Source: Zootoca vivipara
Lineage: Eukaryota
DNA: 64,000 nucleotides
Direction: 5' to 3'
Assembly (NCBI RefSeq): GCF_963506605.1
Contig: NC_083282.1
Coordinates: forward strand, 50,406,001 to 50,470,000
Shown piece by piece: positions 5,823-63,320 of this stretch (the first letter of the stretch is position 1; each line of letters starts with the position of its first letter). The position numbers and the translations under genes were made by a program. The notes under the pieces were generated by a model. The model saw only the letters and a list, made by a program, of their open reading frames with translations. It was not told where the DNA came from and did no database searches.

Positions 5823-6228
5823 CTTTGATAGTTGTCTGCTTTCGCTTGGAAGACCTCGGGGAGCCAGACTTGCGAGCCTCAAAGTCCACTTGCATTGGCC
5901 TGTCTGTCTTTGTGTGCATCTTGAGAAGCACTGGGGAGCTCAAGCCCTTTTCACAAGCCTTTTCACAACTGTTTTCCTTTGTGGGGCTCAGCAGATCTTG
6001 AGAAGGCATCCTGTTTCGATGAGAGACCTTTTCCCATTTATAGTCCCCTTCAAGTGGGGTTTCCGATTCAAAGTCAAAGTTCCATTTCTGCCGAGCCTCC
6101 TCCAGCTGGGCCTTCATCAAAGACTGGAAGTCCTTTTGAAGCTGGTCGTGATCGACTGGTCCAAAGAGGTTTCTGCAGAGCTTCCTGCTGCAGGGAGACC
6201 GAAGGAGGTTGCTCTTAGACAGAGGCAT
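5823..6228 (-). CDS. CDKN1A: CDKN1A (p21) main coding exon (406 nt). Total CDS 456 nt = 151 aa
   Basis: ATG at 6228. Cip/Kip CDK-inhibitor domain CRNLFGPVDHDQLQKD...KWNFDFESETPLEGDYKWEKV. Acceptor AG 8 nt upstream of the ATG (exon starts 6236), GTAAG donor at 5822. Adjacent to SRSF3 as in other vertebrates. Confidence 0.95.
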
Positions 6229-40242: not shown

Positions 40243-40790
40243 NNNNNNNNNNNNNNNNNNNNNNNNNNNNNNNNNNNNNNNNNNNNNNNNNNNNNNNNNN
40301 NNNNNNNNNNNNNNNNNNNNNNNNNNNNNNNNNNNNNNNNNNNNNNNNNNNNNNNNNNNNNNNNNNNNNNNNNNNNNNNNNNNNNNNNNNNNNNNNNNNN
40401 NNNNNNNNNNNNNNNNNNNNNNNNNNNNNNNNNNNNNNNNNNNNNNNNNNNNNNNNNNNNNNNNNNNNNNNNNNNNNNNNNNNNNNNNNNNNNNNNNNNN
40501 NNNNNNNNNNNNNNNNNNNNNNNNNNNNNNNNNNNNNNNNNNNNNNNNNNNNNNNNNNNNNNNNNNNNNNNNNNNNNNNNNNNNNNNNNNNNNNNNNNNN
40601 NNNNNNNNNNNNNNNNNNNNNNNNNNNNNNNNNNNNNNNNNNNNNNNNNNNNNNNNNNNNNNNNNNNNNNNNNNNNNNNNNNNNNNNNNNNNNNNNNNNN
40701 NNNNNNNNNNNNNNNNNNNNNNNNNNNNNNNNNNNNNNNNNNNNNNNNNNNNNNNNNNNNNNNNNNNNNNNNNNNNNNNNNNNNNNNNNN
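40243..40790. other. 548-nt run of N inside SRSF3, between exon 3 and the 39-nt exon (expected location of the poison exon)
   Basis: Ns seen directly. The minus-strand upstream flank is a pyrimidine tract (gatggcttgtttttcattttt). Confidence 0.95.
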
Positions 40791-41520
40791 AAAAATGAAA
40801 AACAAGCCATCAGTACAACCATCTATTAGCTAACAAATACTCCTATTGTGTTCTACAGTGAAAGGGAACAGATTTCACTCTCTTATCTTGTATGGACTTT
40901 ATTTACCTGAAACAGGCTAAAATCAGCCATTGCAGAAATAAAGACCTTAAGTATGACTAATAAACACCCAACCAATCTGTCAGGGTCAGAGAATGCATTA
41001 CTTGTAAAAACCTGCTTTATTTTGAAATTTATTCCTGCATAACTCAAAAGTTGGTTATACTTCAATAGATTTACTATTGTCAGATTTAGCTAAGCAACTG
41101 TTCATTGCTTCAGCATTTTAAAAACAGTTGCCTGCCTGGCATCATTGTGCTAAAGTGGAAAAATCTCGAGTGGGTGAAAAAGCCAAGCTGTTGTATGCAA
41201 TGTTTACAACAATGGTGTAAAGAAAAGAAAGAAAAAAAAACCAAGTTGGAGTACTGGGAAGAAAAAGAAAGTGACTAGAAGATGAACAGACTTCAGAAGG
41301 AAAGATGATAATCCGTGTTAGAGGGCACTATCAACTGGTATAGACACCTAAGGATAAAAGTCAGTGTTCAACACAATGTATCCCTCTAACACACACATGT
41401 TCAATGCTTTAAAATTCTGTGTCTGGCTAGGTATAGACAAACAAGTTTTTATAAAAAAGTCTATTATGCCAAATGGTAATACTGCCAACATTACTATACA
41501 AGTTCTTTGCTCCTAAATAC

Positions 41521-41655
41521 CTGCGGCGAGGTGGAGGGCTTCTCCTGCGATAGTCATCTCGAGGACGTCTACCCCATGAGGGAGGGGGTCCACGGTTCCG
41601 ACTACGTTTTTCACCATTGGAGAGTTCCACCCTGACACGACACCCACAAAGTGTT
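41521..41655 (-). CDS. SRSF3: SRSF3 exon 3 (135 nt)
   Basis: [45 protein letters not shown] with canonical splice sites. Confidence 0.97.
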
Positions 41656-42354
41656 CTAAGAGAAAAAGGGAAGAGTCGTTATATCTAACAGCCCAATTAA
41701 ACTAAGCCAGACACTTCAACTAGTACCCCTGTATTTCCCTAGTTATTTATTCTTCAACACAAAAACCATACAAAATCAGTCTAACTTTGTTTTGCTTAAC
41801 TGAAAATTAGACTGGGGACCAGTATTTCACTCCTAAGAAGTAGCCAGCACTTAAAATTGTTTTGATCATATAGAACGCATATTCAGCTACAGGCTTCTTA
41901 TAGATGTCAAAATAAAAATGTTTTTAAATCAACCATTAAGAGCCTGCAATGTTGAGCGTATTTCCATTTAAAAAATAATAATTAAATGTTTGAAACAGGG
42001 CACTCAGAATCGCAAGAGCTCACAACCAGTTTCCAAAACGTGTAGCTGTGCAAAATCTAGCAGCTCAGGAATAATATGCAACATGTTTAAACTGTACTCA
42101 AAATAAACTTTTCTTGCACAATCAAATGGTTTACATTTCACACAAATCTAACAGACTGTTAGTATGAATTACTCCCCAGCCCCCAACAGAAAATCAGTTC
42201 TATTTCTCTTAGATCTCCAGGTACAGAAGCCAGGCTATTTGTGACCAAGAAAATAATAAATCTAATGACAATTTCTTTTCAATCAAAGCAGCATATTACA
42301 TTAATAGATCAGAGTATACACACAAGCTCAACCCAAATGTAAGTGAATCTTTAC

Positions 42355-42560
42355 CTCCCATCTAGTTCTCTGACTGCATCAGCAGCATCACGTGGGTCTT
42401 CAAATTCAACAAAAGCAAAACCAGGGGGATTCCTAGCAACCCACACACTGCGTAGTGGTCCATAGTAGCCAAAAGCTCGTTCCAATTCAGTTTTGTTGCC
42501 ATTGTTCCCAAGGTTACCTACATAAACCTTGCAGTCCAGTGGACACGAATCACGATGCAT
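42355..42560 (-). CDS. SRSF3: SRSF3 first coding exon, RRM (206 nt)
   Basis: [68 protein letters not shown], the SRSF3/SRp20 RRM. Confidence 0.98.
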
Positions 42561-48580: not shown

Positions 48581-49587
48581 ATCGGTTCTGATGTTCAGAA
48601 TAGCAGGTTCCTGCCTTATATCAAAGCTGAAAGAAGAACAGGCCTGCCGAGATAACACCGCTGGGATAGTATTCAGGTGAGCCCTCGCAGCCCTGCATCT
48701 TCTGACTCTAGCTATGCCCCATCTCCACACATTTCTGATCTGTGGATGGGAAGCGACATCTGCTTATGCAGCATCTGAGGAAAGTATTGTATGTATAATA
48801 GCAAGGCCCCATCCTGTTGCACCACCGTGATGTCCTGAGTCAGGTTGCAAGTTACTGTTGGTGACACTGGAGACTTTGCTGGGAGGAGCCTAAGTATTTG
48901 TTTGCCTTTGAGGCCACCATGGTTCAACCAAGACTGATAAACATTACCAACCTTAAATTTGGGGTGGGCTGTGTGAAGCATGTCTTTAATTTCTACTGAG
49001 CAGGAAGTTTTATTTATGCTTCTCCATTTTTAGTTGTATACATATATTAATATCCCACTTCATATTTCCAGGCTGAGCCCAGACACTGAAGGCATATTGT
49101 GACCATGCGCAATTGTAAATCCTGGTCCAATTCAAAATCTGACAATAACATGTCAAGAAGAGGAAGATTCCTCCTTGCCTTGTTCATATGCTCAGTTCTT
49201 CACTTCTCCGGCTGCCTTCTAGAAAAATCAAGCTGATTCTTACCTTAAACATGTGGTGCTGATTCAGAAATTATATCAAAAGTTATCCAGCAAAAAATGG
49301 TTGGAATAAGTCCCCCAGTGATAAAGAGTTTCACATTCTTCAGCCTTGCTATTGATCCCAACCTCCATAGCATGATTTTACGATCCTATGAAAATGACAG
49401 GATGAGAGATATTTCAAAAGCAGGAGGTCCTGGTGCCTTAATCACTAGCCAAATAGTAAACTTTATTGTCCAAGGTTGATTATCTCTGGGAGAAGCACAT
49501 CTTTCATTTATACAAGGAGGAAAAGATCTTAGTCATAGAATATGATGCGCAGCTCACACCTATTGTTAAGTGTAGCCACAGAGCAAC

Positions 49588-49657
49588 TATAAAAGAAGCT
49601 AGGAAGGCGCACACTGTCATTGCAGGAGGAGGTTCACTAGAGATCTGCTAGCAACAA
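49588..49657 (+). promoter_or_regulatory. PTH4: Candidate PTH4 core promoter and non-coding exon 1 (49619-49657)
   Basis: TATAAAAG at 49588-49595. Inr-like TCATTGC with its A at 49619, 31 nt downstream. CAA|GTAAGA donor at 49658. Confidence 0.55.
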
Positions 49658-50416
49658 GTAAGACTCCACAAATCAACTTTACCATACTCCAATACAAGGA
49701 GAAATAGTAAGTACTCTACATTACACTGCTATTTTTAACCTGTTGGGCTTAAAACTCTATATACACTTACCAGAATATAAGCCCCATTGAACTTATTTCT
49801 GAGTAGACATGTATAGGGTTGCACTGTTAAATATTTTCTTACAACTAATATTTAATGAAGATATTGCCTGTTCTATGTAGCTATACAAATATATCCCAAA
49901 TATATTATTGACAAAATCTGTCAATAGGCGATTATAGTACTGGAAAAATTGAACCAATGGCTTGTGCCATTCAGGATGTATTTTGTGTACAGTATTCACA
50001 TATTTCTTGAAAACCAGTTCTGGTTCAGATCAGAATATTTGTTTTGTTCGCCCCAAAAGCAAACAATTTTATATACATATTATGCTATTGATTTTCATAG
50101 GCAATACTAACCTGAGTGAAGATTGCAGTAATATATTTATGACAGGAATATTTGGAATATATATTTAAAAGATGGTTTTCTATTGTTCAAATTTTGTATC
50201 CTAATATACAAATTATTTGGTTTTTGTTGTCATAGTAAATATGAAAAGGCAAAGAATAATATTTCTTTAAAAATTATATATTTCAGGCCAATACTTCCTA
50301 TCTGCCACTATGATTTAATTTTACTATCGATTATTTAAGTGGAATATGTTATAGTTGCAAGTTGCATTTCAATGTCCATCTTATTTCTTCTTGTTTAACA
50401 GTTTACAAGACAGAAG

Positions 50417-50505
50417 ATGCTTTTGTCCCAAAGATATCTACAGATGGTGACATTTTTGTCCATTTTTTTTCTTGTTTGGTTTGCAACATGTCAAGAAACA
50501 AAAAC
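50417..50505 (+). CDS. PTH4: PTH4/PTH-L prepro exon: MLLSQRYLQMVTFLSIFFLVWFATCQETK(T)
   Basis: Acceptor ttgtttaacag at 50401, AAG ATG context, hydrophobic signal peptide ending A-T-C. The phase-2 AC|GTAAGA donor matches the phase of the downstream exon. Confidence 0.85.
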
Positions 50506-52716
50506 GTAAGAATATTTTTTAGTTAAATTTTTGATAAGCTTTATTTTAATATGATGGGTTTTTTTTTGTTTTTTTTTACTGTGTTGACTTTTGGATGTAA
50601 AACGTTAACATTGCAGTAATGCTTTACAATATGTATTTTTCTGAAGGAGATCACCGTGCAAACAAATGTTTAGCATCATTTGTAATTTTTAAAATGATTT
50701 TTCTTTAAAATGTGATAAATTTGAAAGATACTTTTAAAAACAAGTATCCTGTACTGAAAGTCACAAGATAGCTCAGGGAAAGGGCAAAGTCTTCCTGTTG
50801 TTAGAGCTTTCCAAGATGGTTTCAAAAACCATAAAGAGATATTCTGTTCATTCCTAGATAGTGATGATAAGGGCGAGAAAGCTACCTCTTTTAACATGTC
50901 AAAGCACAAATCCATAGCAAAATCAGAAACAATGAAGACAGCTACAAACTGTATGTTATTCACATGTCTGTCCTGTTCACATATATTAGCCTGGTTTAGA
51001 TATAATGGGAAACCAGTTGCTCACCACATGAGTGAGCCCACATGAACCTCAGGCTCACATGGTCTGCTGGTCATAAGGTTAGTACCTCTTTCTACAATCT
51101 CTTCAGCCTGGGCATAAAGAGGAACTGCGGCTTGTTTAAAAATGGAAGCTTCCAATCTCCTTGTGGCCACGGGAGAGAGATGCATAGAAACTCGAGACTC
51201 GTACTCTTTCATGGAGTAGGAAATCATGGTTTCCCATTATGTCGGAAACAGGCCAAAGTATGTGGAAGTCTTGGCATGAAAATGGGTGCATGGATCAGGA
51301 AATATGACTCCCCCCCCTTTTTTACCTCCCTGCACTCCATCAGTCCAGGCACTTTTCTCCTAGCCGAGTTTATGGAGCAGGGAGTACACCACAACTTTAT
51401 TGCAAAGGTGGAGCACAATGAACAAATGAACAAATGTGACTGCCATCATCATGTCTAGCATAGGACACAGGAGCATATTTATAATGAATCAAGCCATTGG
51501 TCCATCCAGCGAAGCATTCTCTATATACTGACTGGCAGCCCTAACCACTCTCCAAGGTTTTAGGCAGGAGAGGTGAGGTAGTGGGGAGGTCAGCATGGTA
51601 CAAATGCACTGGCAGAGCCAATCAGAGGCATTTGGTGGTGTGTTTGCACCGCACTGACCTCTATGCCACTCTACCCCTCAAACACAGATGTTGGAAGGTC
51701 AGGTGCCACCCTCATCCATGCTGTCCACAACTGGATAGGAGTCTTTCCCAGTCCTACCTGCAGATGCTGTTTAACCTTGAATGTTTTGCCTGCAAATCAT
51801 GTGCTCTACCACTGACTTATGATCCTTTCCCAAGTATGGCCCTCAGTGGGCTCTCTTTGGTCAGTGGTACTATAATGAACAGACAAGTTCTGTGAATAAC
51901 AACTAGCTATGCCACCTTAGTTTTATCCTGCAAAAAAGTCACTGGATAGAAACTATAATGCAATAACCTGAAACAGCCATGTGAACAGTGACAATGCTGA
52001 TATGCTTGTACAGTAATCTGTCTTTTCATATATTAGTTTAAAGTTGGTTGTGCACCTATCAGTGATTAACCTTTACTGAATTTTAGGTTTCCCAGTTTGA
52101 AACAACTCCAAGTTGTTCAACACTGAAAAGCCATCTAATATTTGCTAGAGGGTAGCCATGAAAAGATTTCTTAGCAAGGGACAGGAAAGTAAGAAACATC
52201 CGTGCAAATTCAGACTGGAAAACATTCAGATTCCATTGAATTCAGTGGAACATATTCCAAAACAAGCATGCATAGAATTGTAGCCTTACAGTCCAATCCT
52301 ATATATGCCTACTTAGAAGTAAGCCCTACTGAGTTCAATGGAACTTATTCTGAGATAGTGTTTATAGGATTCCAGCCCTAAAGAATTTAGAATAAAGGCA
52401 GATGAGGAGCTGTGGGACAATGACTTGCATGGCTTTGGGGACTGTCAACTTTGCATTGATCAGTCCAATTCTACAAAGAAAATAAGAAATGCAGATGTCA
52501 AACGTCTGAAGTGGTCAGCACTGGTTCAGACCCAGGAATACCATACACTAATTTTGCAAGCAGTTAGATGGCACCAGATAGTTCAACAAGGTTGGACACA
52601 ATCCCTTTGTGATCTTGGTTTCCTCATCTTTAACTAATATATTTGAAATGTTTTCTTGCTTTGTTGTGAATGTGTTTCTGCTTCTCAAGCACAGTACTGG
52701 CTTTTTCACATTTCAG

Positions 52717-53107
52717 TAAGAGAGGAGTGGCAGAATTCCAGTTCTTGCATAATAAAGGAAATCTCCGTGAAGAGTTAAACCGACTGATTTGGCTCCACCA
52801 AGCCATGGGAGGAGTGCACACAGCCGTGGGCAGGGACATCCCGCAAGCACACATTGTATGGACCTCACCAAAGAACCAAGACCTCTCCGATCTCTCTGAT
52901 GGAACTGGCAGAGAAGAGTCTCTAGAAATGATGAAGCAACTGCTGCTGGGATTGCTGGAGAAGGAAGAGCCTTTTGCTGTCCTCAGGAAAACAAATGTGT
53001 TGCAATATCTAAAGAATGTAAAAGGTAATCAGGACCTGCAAGATCTTTCTGACATATTTCAAGGTGGAGATCAAGATGGCAAAAGAAATCCCAGCACCCA
53101 GACATAG
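52717..53107 (+). CDS. PTH4: PTH4/PTH-L mature-peptide exon: KR-GVAEFQFLHNKGNLREELNRLIWLHQAMGGVHTA plus C-terminal extension. Precursor is 159 aa
   Basis: ttttcacatttcag acceptor. Dibasic KR followed by the PTH-family signature V2,E4,Q6,H9,K11,G12,R20,W23,L24,H32,T33,A34 (cf. PTHrP [34 protein letters not shown]). Location in the CDKN1A/SRSF3/STK38 block is the known PTH4 synteny. Confidence 0.88.
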
Positions 53108-53613
53108 ATTTTCTGACTGAACCTATTGCAGTCCATCTGCTACTTGAGATATATACACTGAGGGAGATCAAAAGAAAAGGTGATTAACAAAGAAAATGTG
53201 CATTTGTGCCATTTACTACTCCTTCGCATTGTTGAAAGGCAGCTTCACTAAGGGCCAGAACATTCCCCCCTTATTCCGATTATTATACAGGAATGTGCAG
53301 GGCTTAAAAGTTTCCTTTCTAGATAGCACAAATATTTTATAACTCTTAGCAATATTGCCATGGGCTATATATTATTATTGCTACTTCACTCCTTTGCATT
53401 TGTTGAACAATATTATTGAGGTATCTGTGTATTTGTGCATGCAGGTTCTGCTGGGGTATGTGGAAAGTATTCACTCTTTGTCCCTTATACGCATTTCTTG
53501 CTTCCACCCAGGGGCGTAGCCAGGATCAAAATTAGGGGGGGCAAGGGGCAAGGGGCGGGGCCAAGGCACGGGAGGGGAGGGGCCACAGTGGGGCAAGGAA
53601 AGCCATGGTCGTT

Positions 53614-53845
53614 CAGGGGCGAGGGGGCGCCAGGATCAGCCCGAAATCGGGCTGCTCCGACCCCCTCCTCCACCTCTGCGACCGGCAGGGGTGAGGGGGC
53701 GCCAGGATCAGCCTGAAATCAGGCTGCTCCGACCCCCTCCTTCCCCTCCTCAACCGGCAGGGGCGAGGGGGCGCCAGGATCACCCCAAAATCGGGCTGCT
53801 CTGACCCCCTCCCCCCCTCGAACGGCAGGGGTGAGGGGGCGCCAG
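53614..53845 (+). repeat. GC-rich ~72-bp tandem repeat (about 3.3 units) inside a MITE-like insertion starting ~53509
   Basis: Units start at 53614, 53686, 53758 and 53826 (caggggYgagggggcgccag...). Confidence 0.8.
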
Positions 53846-54231
53846 AGGGGGCGCAAAGTGTTTGGCTGGCTTTCCCTCTACCCGCCCCACAGCCAGCAAG
53901 GGAGAAGGGAGACGTCCCTTCTAGCTGGCTGGCTGTGGGGCGGGTGGAGGGAAAGCCCCAGAGCTGCGCAAATATACATATTTTTAAATGTAAAAACATT
54001 CTGCTGCAACTCTGAAGATGTGGATAGATCTTTATTTCGGCTATAAGCCCACAGAAATAAACATAAAAATACTGAAGTTGTGGAATTGGAAGCAACTGGT
54101 TGCAAGTAACTGGTTAGCTGCGTGAACAAAATATTTTAGATACTACATACCTCTGGAAGAAGTATGCTGAGGGTTCCCACTTTCCAGAGGGATGAAAAGG
54201 TTTTGTCAGAAGAGGTTCAAAGTCTATTGGA

Positions 54232-57516: not shown

Positions 57517-57575
57517 TCCTCCTCCTCCTCCTCCTCCTCCTCCTCCTCCTCCTCCTCCTCCTCCTCCTTCCTCCT
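57517..57575 (+). repeat. (CCT)n microsatellite at the 5' end of STK38 intron 1
   Basis: Seen directly. Confidence 0.95.
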
Positions 57576-59562
57576 CTTGAGTCTCCTGCCTCCCCCCCCC
57601 AAAAAAACCATCTTCTTCTTGACCACATAGATTCCTGCCTGCTAGGTTTTTAGCGTGACGCCTGACTCTGCCTTTCCTTCCTCTGTTTACACCTGCTCGC
57701 CTCTTCCCCCTCGCAAACTTCTGTGGAAAATGGACCTCGTGCTCGTTTTTCCTTCTTCATCTTCTCCTTGTCGTTTCTGCTGGCGAGTGAGGCTTTTGCT
57801 GACTTACTTGAGGAGAGGGAATTGCTCCCGGGTAAATGTGACTAGGAGTGTAGCAGCTCCTTATAGTTAAGTCTCCTGGGATTCTAGTCATTGTATAAGC
57901 CCTACATGTAAAAAGCACATTTCTTGCCCCTTCCTGCCCCCCAAGCGCTGGGAACTGTATTTTGTTAAGGGTACTGGGAATTTGCAGCTTTAGGAGGGGT
58001 AAGTTGCTGTTGCCAGGATTCTTTGGGGGGAAATGTGCGTTGAATGCATAGGGGAAGACTTCGCTTTGAATTCTAGTAGGCCCCACCTGTGTTGTACATT
58101 TAAAGCTGTACCGTGCCACTTAAAAACATCCGTGGATCTCCCCCAAAAGCATTCTGGCAATTGTGGTTTGTTAAGCATGGTCAGAGTTGTTAGAATACCC
58201 CTATTCCCTGCACAAAGCTACAATTCCCAGAGATCCTGAGAACTGTAGCTCCTTGAGAGGAACAGGGGTCTTCCTAACAACCCTTAACACCCATAACAAA
58301 TTTTGTGGGAAGCCAGGGCTGTGTCATGCGGCATGATCCTGTAACTGGCATGATAGGCTAGGTACACTGCAGATGGGCCATAGTGACACTCTGGTCCTTG
58401 GGGATGATGATAATTTTTTAAATGGGAAATTTCAACTGGCAAAAAGGAGTTGCAGTTGCCTAGTATCACGAAGAGAGATAATTTATATTATGTACAGCTT
58501 TTCTTGGAAGGGAGTGCACCATAAAATGATTGCATTCAAAGAGCCATGCGAGCAAAATACTCACTTTAATTAGTTTAAAGAATTATTTTATATAACCTTT
58601 GGTTAGTTTGGTGAGAAGTTCTGATGAAATTGGGAAGGTTTTAAAAGCAGTTGCAATTGTTAACAACTAAAGCAAGCGTGCAAGAGCTAATTGGTTCTAG
58701 GTCAGCTAGTTACACTGTGAAGAAAATAGGAACAGAAACTTTTGTTTCTCCTGTCATACAAGGAAAAATACTGCTTGGAGGTAAGCCCCATTGAAATCAC
58801 TGGGACTTATCTCCAAGTAAATTTGAGCTGAAAATTCCTGATTAGAATCTTAGTTGGAAGGATTAAAAACCATCTAGTCCACTTCTACTTAGGTATATTA
58901 TCAGCTACTGTAGTTATCTGTGATAACTAGGTGGCAATCCATTTTGTGCTTAGAAACCTCCAACAGTTCTTTGCCTTGTGTTGCAGCCTGTTCCACTGTC
59001 CAGCAGTTCATATGGTCAGGACAATCCTTCTTTCCAAAGTGTAATCAATATTCCCTTTCCCTGACTCTACAGCAACAGAAACAAATTTGCTCAGTCTTTG
59101 TGGACAGCCCTGCAGATATTGTCTCTTACTCAATAGAAGCAAGTTCCAAGGAAATAAATGTGGCTTGTGCTGTGTTTGTAAATACTTTTACATGGAAATA
59201 CGTACTATGATTGGTTTAAGACATGTTGGTAGAATTTTAATTGACGAGATGAAAGTAATAAGAGACTTAACATTTTTAATGCAACCTGAAAATGTCATTC
59301 AGAGACATAATAGTTATCATATTTCTTTCCTCCTTGTTCATAAATTATGTAGAAAAACAGGAAGTCTGACTTGTACAATTATTTTGCAACATTGTGGCAT
59401 TTTACATTTGTAGCTTCCAGTTTGGGCATATTGTGTTTTGCAAAGCTTTTGTTCATTTTAAAACTGGCTCCTTTATTTAAATTTAAGCCATCATGTAGTG
59501 TAGTTTTCTTGCTTCAAGGTTTAGGATCACATATATTTTCTAATTTTTCTCTTCCAGGAACC

Positions 59563-59693: not shown

Positions 59694-61853
59694 GTAAATA
59701 TCCCAGCTGCATGAAAACGGAAGTAATGCTATTTTCCTTATACTGTATCAAGATTTAAGAAACAATGGATGCCACAAATACACTGATCATCTTATCCTGC
59801 TAGAAGTTTTGATAACACTTTTAAGTCCTCAAAAAGCCTTTAATAAAATACTTCAGATCATATATTTCAGTGCCCATGCTATCCTCTTGTTGTGCATTTC
59901 AAGAAAGGCATATGTTGCAGATGCTTGATGAAAACTAGTAGCAGCATTTTCCTGGACTGAAAGTTGTTTTTCTCTCTCTAGTGTTAGGTTTTATTTTTAT
60001 TTCAGTGTGTCCAGTATAAACAGTTTTTATTGCGAAATGCGCTTGGCTCTACTGTGTACTATAATCAAAAGCAGCCTCTCAAAACACATTTTACTCCCTC
60101 CTGGATTTCATTCCCTTCTAAGTATTGTATTTTATATTTATCTGTAAAATATATTAACTACTTCCTGCTACAAGTAGTGGTCAAATGTGCTCAGTAATAT
60201 ATATATATTAATATATATATATATATTAATGCATAAAAACATTGTTCCAATTTAGCTTTCCCTTATTTGAAATATTTAACAAACACCCCTCTCTTCATTC
60301 TGTTGAATGCCAGTTGGAACATAGGTCCTTGAAGGTGAAGCCACCGCTGAAAAACGCACCTCTCTAGTGGTTACCCGTTTCCCTTCACTTGGTGGGGAAA
60401 CTACACCAGCGTCTCTCTAGATGTTGTAGTTGAAAGCTTATTAGCTTATCAATGAGAAGATCAGTTATAGAAATAGTTTTTCACTGCTGCCAGTCTTTTC
60501 CTATGACATCCAGCCATGTGAAATCTTTGTTAGGATATGCTGCCAGTTCACATGGAATAACATTCCTGCATTGCAGTGGGTTGTACTAGATGACCCTTGG
60601 GTTCCCTTCCAACTCTACAATTCTATAGTTCTAACCGTGAGGTACATTTGATTGTGTGTGCTTGACTGGTACCCTGGAACAGTGTTTCCTTTCCCCCACC
60701 CCGGATTCTATTGGGGGACCACTTCAGGTTTGCTGATGATCTTGAGGGGGGGGGGGGTGCTTCATGTTTTCCCCCTCTGTTGTATAATTTGTAATGTGCT
60801 GTGCTAGATGCTGTCTTTTTATTGGTTTTTTATTTCTTGTATTTTTTTGTATTACAATTTGCATTCTATGGAATTCAAATTATAATACAGTAAAATATAA
60901 TAAAAGAAGCAGCAATACAATACAGTTTAAAATCAACATACAGTAATAATTTAACGTGGACATGCTGAAGACCACCTGCATGAAGCTCACAGGAACCCTT
61001 GCCTCAGAATTCTATTGTAAGGAGTTTCAGTTCTTTTGAAATACATTGTCTTTGAGCAATTTCCTTGAAAGGCCTTACTAAAATGCATCAGATCTACTCC
61101 CTTCTATATCCTCCTTAAATTTATCCAGCTTTTTATTTGCACATACAGAATAACTAAAGGTTTATTAAGCTGACAGGTTGGTTGGAATTGAAGAGACTGA
61201 TCATTTTCATAGAAATGGAAGTAGTTTATAGTCTAAGAAGCTCTCTATAGTGTTTAAAATGTCATTTTATATGTTTAATGAAATTCCTATGCTTATTTTC
61301 TTCTATAATTCTGTGAGGTTAATGCAGAAATGAAGTCTTTCCCACTTTTTACGTTCTACTGCTCCACCCAGTGACAAATGCAGTTGTGTTGTGCACTATG
61401 GATTGGGTATTAGATTGGCTGCGATGATGTGGCCTCTGTTTTTGCCAGCTATCTCCTGTGAGCCCTTTCCCACCACAGACGCACCTTGACCTGGCAGTAA
61501 GGTATTTGATGGTTGATCTAAATCAGGTCTTGATACCTTCCAGAAGTTGCTCACCCTGCAATCAGTTTGTACGTCCTTTTTATTATAAATGATTAAACTC
61601 TGCTCTTGTTTTGTGCCCCTTTTCTTTACAAAAGACTTAATTTGTATGATGCAAATGCACGATAAGAGCAAATTTCCTGTTCATTTTGCAGAAGTTGAAG
61701 CAGAAGCAGGGTGTTTATCTTGATTGCTGTGTGCATTAAGAAATGAAGCCTTGGAATTCAGTGTTCCAATTCCTGGCAGCTCTATTCTGTGCTGAAGTTG
61801 TATGCATGAACTTATGGAGACCTCATTCAAAAACTTTATTCTTTTTTTTCCAG

Positions 61854-62255: not shown

Positions 62256-63320
<1,065 letters not shown>

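What the first reader, a model, noticed from the sequence alone, without database searches (positions are those of the whole stretch)
49588..53107. Intact three-exon PTH4 (PTH-L) hormone gene hidden between SRSF3 and STK38
Seen: TATA/Inr and a 39-nt leader exon, then an 89-nt coding exon (too short for the ORF track) encoding a signal peptide. Its phase-2 donor (AC|gt) joins T AAG AGA at 52717, giving an uninterrupted 159-aa prepro-hormone: ~25-aa signal, QETKTKR pro-segment, then a PTH-family 1-34 peptide. Established: PTH and PTHLH also have the intron just before the dibasic site. PTH4/PTH-L lies near CDKN1A/SRSF3 in fish and birds, was lost in eutherians, and in zebrafish is a brain-expressed regulator of bone mineral and phosphate. 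Inference: this is a functional squamate PTH4. I know of no functional characterisation of it in lizards.
Basis: partly seen in the sequence, partly recalled or inferred. Interest (0 to 1): 0.9.

Follow-up and report, generated by a model that had tools for sequence, protein, structure and literature searches.

The report
Intact PTH4 hormone gene in lizard
This is an intact copy of PTH4, a parathyroid-hormone relative that placental mammals lost. It sits where expected between SRSF3 and STK38 in a lacertid lizard, and the gene is already annotated in many other reptiles, so the only unusual feature is a heavily rewritten hormone tip.

Summary
An 89-nt coding stretch (50417-50505) encodes a signal peptide and ends in AC|GTAAGA. 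The acceptor tttcag|T at 52717 opens a 129-codon reading frame that runs to TAG at 53105-53107.

Exon 3 passes Pfam Parathyroid (E 1.9e-8). It is 62-74% identical to proteins that NCBI names "parathyroid hormone 4-like" in Elgaria, Varanus and Hemicordylus, and to an Anolis protein. It falls inside the PTH4 clade, and it lies between SRSF3 (- strand) and an STK38-type kinase gene (+ strand), with CDKN1A beyond. So the gene is a PTH4 orthologue, a new member of a known kind.

- **Annotation:** No correct lacertid model appeared in the protein collection; there was only a mis-spliced Podarcis one.
- **Not shown:** Expression, the leader exon and the 3' end. RNA reads were too few to list any junction, and one read pair is merely compatible with splicing at 50402.
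- **Most interesting point:** Residues 1-19 of the mature peptide differ at 13 positions from the squamate consensus. They are identical in the one other full lacertid sequence and, from residue 2, in the Podarcis partial model. The residues I recall as receptor-contacting are kept.

The parts
49532..49570 (+). Promoter-proximal block just 5' of the TATA box, apparently conserved between snake and lacertid
   Evidence: A partial Naja naja model (P0020) translates the equivalent DNA as LMEYDAQFIPIVQ. The window reads VIEYDAQLTPIVK, 8 of 13 identical, pairwise E 2e-4. This is weak, indirect evidence.
49588..49595 (+). TATA box (TATAAAAG)
   Evidence: Read. It is retained in a related organism's contig that covers 49464-49856 (table 8). 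Function was not tested.
49619..49657 (+). Proposed non-coding exon 1 (39 nt); start and end unverified
   Evidence: The donor CAA|GTAAGA is at 49657/58, and an alternative donor ATA|GTAAGT is at 49706/07. One sense-oriented read pair of run X15 puts about 122 bases into 49578-49716. That fits the longer exon somewhat better but does not decide.
50402..50505 (+). Exon 2: 15 nt of leader, then ATG at 50417 and 89 coding nt (signal peptide plus the start of the pro-segment)
   Evidence: The translation is 66% identical to the Anolis protein in alignment A1 and aligns with the N-termini of the other squamate PTH4 models. Run X15 has about 20 bases in 50273-50411 and about 142 in 50412-50550, which is compatible with two reads that begin at 50402.
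52717..53107 (+). Exon 3, coding part: completes the Thr codon, then KR, the mature peptide, the C-terminal region and the TAG stop
   Evidence: Pfam PF01279 at E 1.9e-8. It is 96% identical to a lacertid ORF and 62-74% identical to named squamate PTH4-like proteins.
52724..52825 (+). Predicted mature PTH4(1-34): GVAEFQFLHNKGNLREELNRLIWLHQAMGGVHTA
   Evidence: It follows the KR site and aligns residue for residue with PTHrP(1-36) and PTH(1-34) chains of the PDB. Compared with the squamate consensus, 13 of residues 1-19 differ but only 3 of residues 20-36.

Best explanation
The stretch holds the lacertid orthologue of PTH4 (PTH-L), a secreted prepro-hormone gene of the parathyroid hormone family.

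**Shown**
- There are two coding exons with canonical splice signals and an uninterrupted frame of 159 codons.
- Membership of the PTH family and of its PTH4 branch holds.
- The conserved position between SRSF3 and an STK38-type kinase gene holds.

**Inferred**
- A TATA-driven transcript starts near 49619 and carries a short leader exon.
- A signal peptide of about 25 residues is cut after ATC.
- A prohormone convertase cuts after the pro-segment QETKTKR and frees a peptide whose first 34 residues form the receptor-binding hormone.
- That peptide would dock its 20-34 helix (Arg20, Trp23, Leu24, Met28, Val31, His32) on the extracellular domain of a class-B PTH receptor. Its N-terminus (Val2, Glu4, Gln6, Leu8, His9) would enter the transmembrane core and raise cAMP, as chicken PTH-L(1-34) does on PTH1R.

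In lacertids, residues 1-19 were heavily rewritten at the positions I recall as tolerant and then held constant. I therefore expect an active hormone with altered potency or receptor preference, not a dead gene.
For: - **Sequence anatomy:**
- **Family:** Pfam Parathyroid 35.4 bits, E 1.9e-8. PDB PTHrP and PTH peptides align 1:1 from residue 2.
- **Named relatives:** best hits over the full exon-3 length are proteins named parathyroid hormone 4-like in Elgaria (74%), Varanus (69%) and Hemicordylus (65%), plus a 159-aa Anolis protein (62%). The same family name runs through birds, one crocodilian protein, axolotl and lungfish.
- **Exon 2:** it aligns with their signal peptides, and the junction gives the same 7-residue pro-segment length as Anolis QESENKR.
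- **Tree:** of 59 core sequences, the window and two lacertid sequences form a 100/100 group. That group sits inside the block of all 32 PTH4 rows, apart from the PTHrP-like and PTH-like rows. The outgroup labels were checked against the PDB.
- **Synteny:** CDKN1A CDI domain at about 6.0-6.2 kb on the - strand. SRSF3 exon at 42351-42560 on the - strand, E 2e-45 to PDB SRSF3. NDR/STK38-type exons at 59.5 and 62.3 kb on the + strand. PTH-L is linked to SFRS3 in Xenopus and chicken, and the flanking genes lie on human chromosome 6 without PTH-L (PMC3009671).
- **Constraint:** the mature 1-36 region is identical between the window and a second lacertid (P0001), which differs at 5 residues further on.
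- **Receptor activation in a relative:** chicken PTH-L(1-34) activates PTH1R with an EC50 of 7.7 nM (PMC3483286).
Against: - No splice junction was listed in three RNA runs of the same species label. About 6% of each run was read, and only 4-14 reads landed on the 4.1 kb.
- The leader exon, the transcription start and the poly(A) site are unverified. The first canonical poly(A) signal is about 950 nt past the stop, beyond a GC-rich tandem repeat.
- 16 of 36 residues of the normally most conserved segment differ from the squamate consensus, against 1-5 in most squamates and 11 in Sceloporus.
- The 'MHD' motif reported for all studied PTH-L peptides (PMC4354418) reads LHN here.
- No correct lacertid gene model was in the protein collection.
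- dN/dS could not be computed, because DNA of relatives was not obtainable.
Confidence: 0.78

Rival explanations
1. The gene is an intact-looking relic. PTH4 would be losing its function in lacertids, the receptor-activating end drifted under relaxed constraint, and the locus is barely or never expressed as a sense mRNA.
For: - 13 of 19 N-terminal residues are changed, and the usual pattern (hormone part slower than the tail) is reversed: 16/36 against 15/91, Fisher p = 0.002.
- The MHD motif is lost.
- No junction reads were listed.
- Reads over exon 3 in run X14 look antisense.
- The collection held no correct lacertid model.
- The literature already proposes that PTH-L gradually lost calciotropic activity in tetrapods before its loss in mammals (PMC4354418).
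Against: - The 159-codon frame, ATG context, all four splice signals, the dibasic site and the TATA box are intact.
- Val2, Glu4, Gln6, Leu8, His9, Gly12, Arg20, Trp23, Leu24 and His32 are all kept. Random drift over 16 hits would be unlikely to spare them.
- The rewritten segment is identical in the window and in P0001 and, from residue 2, in Podarcis P0011, while their tails differ.
- The C-terminal region is as conserved as in other squamates.
Confidence: 0.12
2. The gene is expressed, but the peptide has changed its job. The rewritten residues 1-19 would have shifted it to another PTH receptor subtype, to a biased signalling mode or to antagonism, by adaptive change on the lacertid stem.
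For: - Changes cluster in residues 1-19 (13/19) against residues 20-36 (3/17), Fisher p = 0.003.
- The lacertid stem branch is 0.41 changes per site, against 0.02-0.1 for the inner branches among the other squamates.
- The segment has been fixed since then.
- From my recollection of PTH/PTHrP pharmacology, position 5 (His to Phe here) sets receptor-subtype and conformational selectivity, and Gly1 analogues are cAMP-selective.
- Lizards keep PTH1R, PTH2R and PTH3R (PMC3483286).
Against: - No codon-level test of positive selection was possible.
- No receptor sequences of this species were examined.
- Sceloporus also shows 11/36 changes, so faster change in this segment is not confined to lacertids.
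- All substitutions sit at positions that I recall as tolerant, so an unchanged function remains possible.
Confidence: 0.25

Closest known systems
PTH4 / PTH-L of other squamates (NCBI 'parathyroid hormone 4-like' of Elgaria, Varanus, Hemicordylus, Sceloporus and Ahaetulla; Anolis G1KSU8)
   Same: - The length is similar (149-166 aa; Anolis also has 159).
- The signal peptide, the QE..KR pro-segment and the RL(M/I)WLH..MGGVHTA core match.
- The long C-terminal region (MKQLLLGLLEKE.PFAVLRKTNVLQYLKNVKG...DQDGKRN) is conserved.
- Identity is 62-74% over exon 3.
   Different: - Residues 1-19 of the mature peptide read GVAEFQFLHNKGNLREELN here, against AVTEHQLLNDRGRALQGLK.
- The Elgaria and Varanus models use an acceptor further upstream and carry 7 more residues before KR.
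- In the window an in-frame alternative acceptor (AG at 52688-89) would add 9 residues. Its use is untested.
Chicken and Xenopus PTH-L (Pinheiro et al. 2010, PMC3009671; 2012, PMC3483286)
   Same: - Two coding exons: prepro, then mature.
- Linkage to SFRS3/SRSF3.
- Membership of the PTH-L clade.
- The chicken 1-34 peptide activates PTH1R, which is the mechanism I propose here.
   Different: - Nothing has been measured for any lizard peptide.
- Bird sequences keep AVTEHQLMHDKGR.
- The window lacks the MHD motif.
Zebrafish Pth4 (Suarez-Bregua et al. 2017, as reviewed in PMC5640766)
   Same: It is the orthologous hormone and shares the core motif RLIWL...GLHTA. The review reports it as made by hypothalamic neurons and acting on bone mineral balance.
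   Different: - Teleost genes use an RR site and have a different, shorter C-terminal part.
- Brain expression in lizards is untested.
PTH and PTHLH (PTHrP)
   Same: - Pfam family PF01279.
- The intron lies just before the dibasic site.
- The helical 1-34 pharmacophore is shared. PDB PTHrP(1-36) aligns to residues 2-34 of the predicted peptide.
   Different: - They fall in separate clades and sit at different loci.
- The C-terminal region is unrelated.

Membership tests
Parathyroid hormone family (Pfam PF01279) | Profile match above the curated cut-off | tested here: met
   The exon 3 translation scores 35.4 bits against a cut-off of 22, E 1.9e-8, covering residues 1-51.
Parathyroid hormone family (Pfam PF01279) | Secretory prepro-architecture: signal peptide, short pro-segment ending in a dibasic site, hormone at the new N-terminus | tested here: met
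   The hydrophobic core and A-T-C end are in exon 2, and KR lies directly before the aligned residue 1. SignalP was not available and the joined protein was not built, so this rests on a hydropathy window and on alignment.
Parathyroid hormone family (Pfam PF01279) | Intron between the prepro exon and the Lys-Arg + mature exon | tested here: met
   The phase-2 donor is at 50505 and the acceptor at 52717, one base before AAG AGA. The same organisation is described for PTH and PTH-L in PMC3009671.
Parathyroid hormone family (Pfam PF01279) | Receptor pharmacophore: Val2, Glu4, Gln6, Leu/Met8 and His9 for activation; Arg20, Trp23, Leu24, Leu/Met28 and His32 for binding | tested here: met
   All are present in GVAEFQFLHNKGNLREELNRLIWLHQAMGGVHTA. 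The list of key residues is from my own knowledge of PTH/PTHrP structure-activity work.
PTH4 / PTH-L orthology group | Closest relatives over the whole length are PTH4 proteins, and it falls in the PTH4 clade | tested here: met
   Searches show named PTH4-like best hits. In one search it lies inside the block of all 32 PTH4 rows. The branch support there is only moderate (83/30 and 82/92), because just 61 columns were usable.
PTH4 / PTH-L orthology group | Conserved synteny with SRSF3 (SFRS3) | tested here: met
   SRSF3 exons lie at 41.4-42.6 kb on the - strand. An STK38-type kinase gene starts at about 59.5 kb on the + strand. CDKN1A is at about 6 kb. PMC3009671 reports the PTH-L to SFRS3 linkage.
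PTH4 / PTH-L orthology group | 'MHD' motif at residues 8-10, reported for all PTH-L peptides studied (PMC4354418) | tested here: not met
   The window has LHN. Other squamates have LND or LHD, and Sceloporus MSD. The motif is therefore already loose in squamates, so it is not a strict requirement for orthology.
PTH4 / PTH-L orthology group | Expression as a spliced mRNA | tested here: inconclusive
   One search listed no junction, because a junction needs 3 or more reads. One sense-oriented pair in X15 gives base counts that fit reads starting at 50402.
PTH4 / PTH-L orthology group | Activation of a PTH receptor by the 1-34 peptide | not testable with these tools
   No lizard receptor sequence was on hand for a complex prediction. 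This needs a cAMP assay.

The most novel reading that the evidence does not exclude
On the lacertid stem, the receptor-activating half of PTH4 (residues 1-19) was rewritten at 13 positions while the receptor-docking half and the invariant activation residues were kept. The new sequence has been fixed since. This would be an adaptive change of receptor preference or signalling bias of an otherwise extremely conserved hormone (AVTEHQ... from lungfish to snakes), possibly co-evolving with one of the three lizard PTH receptors.
Probability: 0.25. Interest if true: 0.55.

Novelty: new member of a known kind. Interest (0 to 1): 0.3.

Why it matters
PTH4 is the one PTH-family hormone that placental mammals lack. 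Its role has been studied in zebrafish and, briefly, in chicken and frog.

A correct gene model for a lacertid fills an annotation gap, because the only lacertid entry I found is mis-spliced. It also gives the exact peptide to synthesise.

The gene's mere presence is expected. The part worth an experiment is the lacertid-specific rewriting of residues 1-19. This offers a natural variant series for asking which positions set receptor choice among PTH1R, PTH2R and PTH3R. It also bears on calcium handling in egg-laying and viviparous lizards.

Tried and rejected
- No signal-peptide predictor or whole-precursor search was run, and the length is a count.
- **The look-up of encoding contigs:** it was closed. 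I had no DNA of relatives, so there is no dN/dS, no branch-site test, and no comparison of promoters or splice sites.
The run X1 contig is unspliced sequence of a related organism over 49464-49856 and says nothing about expression.
- **Foreign tail:** the 30-letter tail on the X14 reads was searched in the window with up to 2 mismatches and gave no match.
- **AlphaFold2** on exon 3 with a 19-row alignment: mean pLDDT 49.7, pTM 0.20, helices at residues 7-11 and 16-30. This is expected for a free peptide hormone and too poor for a fold search, so none was run.
- **Bacterial-type promoter scan**: not applicable to this genome and disregarded.
- **Chance ORF or non-PTH peptide:** rejected.
- **Suarez-Bregua et al. 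2017:** the primary zebrafish paper was not held. Its content is cited only through the review PMC5640766.
Full report
**What is in the sequence**

- TATAAAAG lies at 49588-49595. A partial initiator puts an A about 31 nt downstream, near 49619.
- The proposed leader exon ends at CAA|GTAAGA (49657/58).
- Exon 2 starts at 50402, after a long pyrimidine tract and AG. It holds ATG at 50417 in the context AAG ATG C and ends at AAC|GTAAGA (50505/06). That gives 89 coding bases, in phase 2.
- Exon 3 starts at 52717, after ctggctttttcacatttcag. Its first base completes a Thr codon, then AAG AGA (Lys-Arg) follows and 127 more codons run to TAG at 53105-07.
- Counted, not joined, the precursor is 29 + 1 + 129 = 159 residues.
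- Exon 2 encodes MLLSQRYLQMVTFLSIFFLVWFATCQETK. It has a basic n-region, a hydrophobic core (Kyte-Doolittle 9-residue means of 2.1-2.6) and a small-residue A-T-C end, so a cut after residue 25 is likely.

I built no joined protein, so no signal-peptide predictor or whole-precursor search was run.

**What family it belongs to**

- The exon 3 translation passes Pfam Parathyroid (PF01279) at 35.4 bits against a cut-off of 22, E 1.9e-8.
- PTHrP(1-36) and PTH peptides of the PDB align residue for residue from position 2 of the predicted mature peptide.
- In the 5.8-billion-protein collection, the best hits cover the whole of exon 3:
  - a Logan ORF from another lacertid (P0001, 96%);
  - NCBI 'parathyroid hormone 4-like' of Elgaria (74%), Varanus (69%) and Hemicordylus (65%);
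  - a 159-aa Anolis protein (62%);
  - a partial Podarcis muralis entry (91% over half the length).
- A profile of five squamate proteins retrieves the same family name through birds, one crocodilian protein, axolotl and lungfish; turtle and coelacanth relatives carry other names.
- Exon 2 aligns with the signal peptides of these models. The junction gives a pro-segment (QETKTKR) of the same length as Anolis QESENKR.

An exhaustive profile search gave 98 family representatives. I sorted them by their cores and checked the outgroup labels against PDB PTHrP and PTH.

In a maximum-likelihood tree of 59 cores, the window, P0001 and P0011 form a 100/100 group. That group sits inside the block of all 32 PTH4 rows, apart from the PTHrP-like and PTH-like rows. 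Support for the PTH4 block is only moderate (83/30 and 82/92), because just 61 columns were usable.

**Neighbourhood**

| Gene | Position and strand | Evidence |
|---|---|---|
| CDKN1A-type CDI domain | about 5950-6204, - strand | Pfam CDI, E 1e-24 |
| SRSF3 | exons at 42351-42560 and 41427-41630, - strand | PDB SRSF3 E 2e-45; RRM_1 |
| NDR/STK38-type kinase | coding exons ending at 59697 and starting at 62262, + strand | |

- A CpG-rich stretch at 56.8-57.6 kb is the kinase gene's probable promoter.
- The short kinase pieces do not separate STK38 from STK38L. The call as STK38 rests on the neighbours.
- PTH4 thus lies in the head-to-head interval between SRSF3 and the kinase gene.
- Pinheiro et al. 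2010 (PMC3009671) found PTH-L linked to SFRS3 in Xenopus and chicken. They found the flanking genes on human chromosome 6 without PTH-L.
- The review PMC5640766 states that PTH4 was lost after the eutherian-metatherian split.

**Is it expressed?**

This remains open.

- Only 4-14 reads per RNA run fell on 49300-53450, and no junction reached the listing threshold.
- In X15, one pair with the first mate on the - strand contributes about 122 bases to 49578-49716, about 20 to 50273-50411 and about 142 to 50412-50550.
- These numbers fit two reads that both begin exactly at 50402, and hence splicing into exon 2. They fit an exon 1 ending at the alternative donor 49706|GTAAGT rather better than one ending at 49657. 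Other layouts are possible, so I count this as compatible, not as proof.
- In X14, six reads lie on about 52934-53010 and continue into 30 letters that are not in the window.
  - Read on the + strand, the break has no GT.
  - Read on the - strand, it falls at a good acceptor (ccttttacattctttag|atattg, exon starting at 53008).
  - The pairs have the orientation expected for a - strand RNA in a dUTP library.
- So an antisense spliced RNA probably crosses exon 3. Unstranded coverage of exon 3 would therefore not prove PTH4 expression.
- The 3' end is unknown. The first canonical poly(A) signal on the + strand after the stop is at 54056, beyond a GC-rich tandem repeat.

**The unusual part**

From lungfish and coelacanth to snakes, the mature peptide begins AVTEHQ(L/F)(L/M)(H/N)D(K/R)GR..QGLKRLMWLHNAMGGVHTA. 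The window has GVAEFQFLHNKGNLREELNRLIWLHQAMGGVHTA.

| Comparison with the squamate consensus | Window | Other squamates |
|---|---|---|
| Residues 1-36 | 16 of 36 differ | 1-5 in most, 11 in Sceloporus |
| Rest of the protein | 15 of 91 differ | ordinary |

- The window's contrast between the two regions gives Fisher p = 0.002.
- The changes cluster in residues 1-19 (13 of 19) against residues 20-36 (3 of 17), p = 0.003.
- The lacertid stem is 0.41 changes per site, against 0.02-0.1 for the inner branches among the other squamates.
- The changes avoid Val2, Glu4, Gln6, Leu8, His9, Gly12, Arg20, Trp23, Leu24 and His32.
- The whole 1-36 segment is identical in the window and in P0001; the Podarcis model P0011 matches from residue 2, its first residues coming from a wrong exon boundary. 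P0001 differs from the window at five residues further on, and P0011 at two within its shorter overlap.
- The 'MHD' motif said to mark all studied PTH-L peptides (PMC4354418) reads LHN here. Other squamates already have LND or LHD.

I read this as an episode of change followed by constraint, not decay. Without codon data this remains an inference.

**How it most likely works**

The steps below are inferred from the family.

1. The precursor is secreted and the signal peptide is removed.
2. A convertase cuts after KR.
3. The 1-34 region binds a class-B PTH receptor in the two-site manner known for PTH and PTHrP, and raises cAMP.

Chicken PTH-L(1-34) activates PTH1R with an EC50 of 7.7 nM and PTH3R only weakly (PMC3483286). 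Lizards have PTH1R, PTH2R and PTH3R genes (same paper).

A structure model of exon 3 was of low confidence (pLDDT 49.7), with helices at residues 7-11 and 16-30. It adds nothing beyond the expected helical tendency.

**Novelty and verdict**

The gene kind, its presence in non-eutherian vertebrates and its position next to SRSF3 are published. Squamate orthologues are already named in NCBI annotation.

The collection held no correct lacertid model. The Podarcis muralis entry P0011 leaves exon 3 after ...SDGT and runs into DNA equivalent to window 53960-54020. I found no paper on PTH4 in lizards.

This is a new member of a known kind. The finding is correct and of modest interest. A testable side question is the rewritten N-terminus.

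**Limits**

- The N gap at 40243-40790 inside SRSF3 was left alone.

Noticed in passing
window 52934-53010 and 49300-49577: Run X14 reads with the orientation of a - strand RNA. Six of them end at a canonical minus-strand acceptor (ctttag|, exon starting at 53008) and continue into 30 letters absent from the window. This may be an antisense lncRNA, or far-upstream 5' exons of SRSF3, crossing the PTH4 locus.
   Followed up: partly
window 53520-53960: A GC-rich tandem repeat of a unit of about 60 nt (ggggcgccaggatcagccYgaaatcRggctgctcYgaccccctcc...), at least three copies, lies directly 3' of PTH4. It sits between the stop codon and the first canonical poly(A) signal at 54056.
   Followed up: no
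window 53960-54020 (equivalent of P0011 C-terminus): The UniProt/Ensembl Podarcis muralis model leaves PTH4 exon 3 after ...SDGT and continues in AQIYIF.NVKTFCCNSEDV, which the window encodes 0.85 kb downstream, next to the repeat. It is a probable mis-model and the only lacertid entry found.
   Followed up: partly
window 52688-52716: An in-frame alternative acceptor (AG at 52688-89) would insert 9 residues (TVLAFSHFS) before KR. The NCBI models of Elgaria and Varanus carry a comparable 7-residue insert (SEFSHFN, TGFSQFS). The frame upstream of the acceptor is open and similar (FSHFSKR) in several squamates.
   Followed up: partly
window 49704-49712: A second strong donor (ATA|GTAAGT at 49706/07) lies 49 nt after the proposed exon 1 donor. 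The X15 base counts fit it slightly better.
   Followed up: partly
window 5950-6204, - strand: A CDKN1A-type CDI domain exon (Pfam CDI, E 1e-24). The GC-rich stretch at 12-14 kb (GC 0.60) may be its promoter island.
   Followed up: partly
window 40243-40790: A single run of 548 N lies inside the SRSF3 gene.
   Followed up: no
window 57540-57600: A long triplet run that translates as poly-Pro, poly-Leu or poly-Arg depending on frame. It lies in the CpG-rich stretch upstream of the STK38-type coding exons.
   Followed up: no
window 53075-53086: A Gly-Lys-Arg site near the C-terminus (DQDGKRN). The Lys-Arg pair recurs in most squamates and in the bird, alligator and turtle PTH4 proteins examined. 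It hints at a second processing step of the precursor, and the scan's note s1-854043 concerns it.
   Followed up: no
window 49464-49856: A 395-nt contig from a related organism (run X1) covers the promoter, exon 1 and the start of intron 1 unspliced. It has 11 substitutions and 4 missing letters. The TATA box is kept, and there is one change (49633) inside the proposed exon 1.
   Followed up: no
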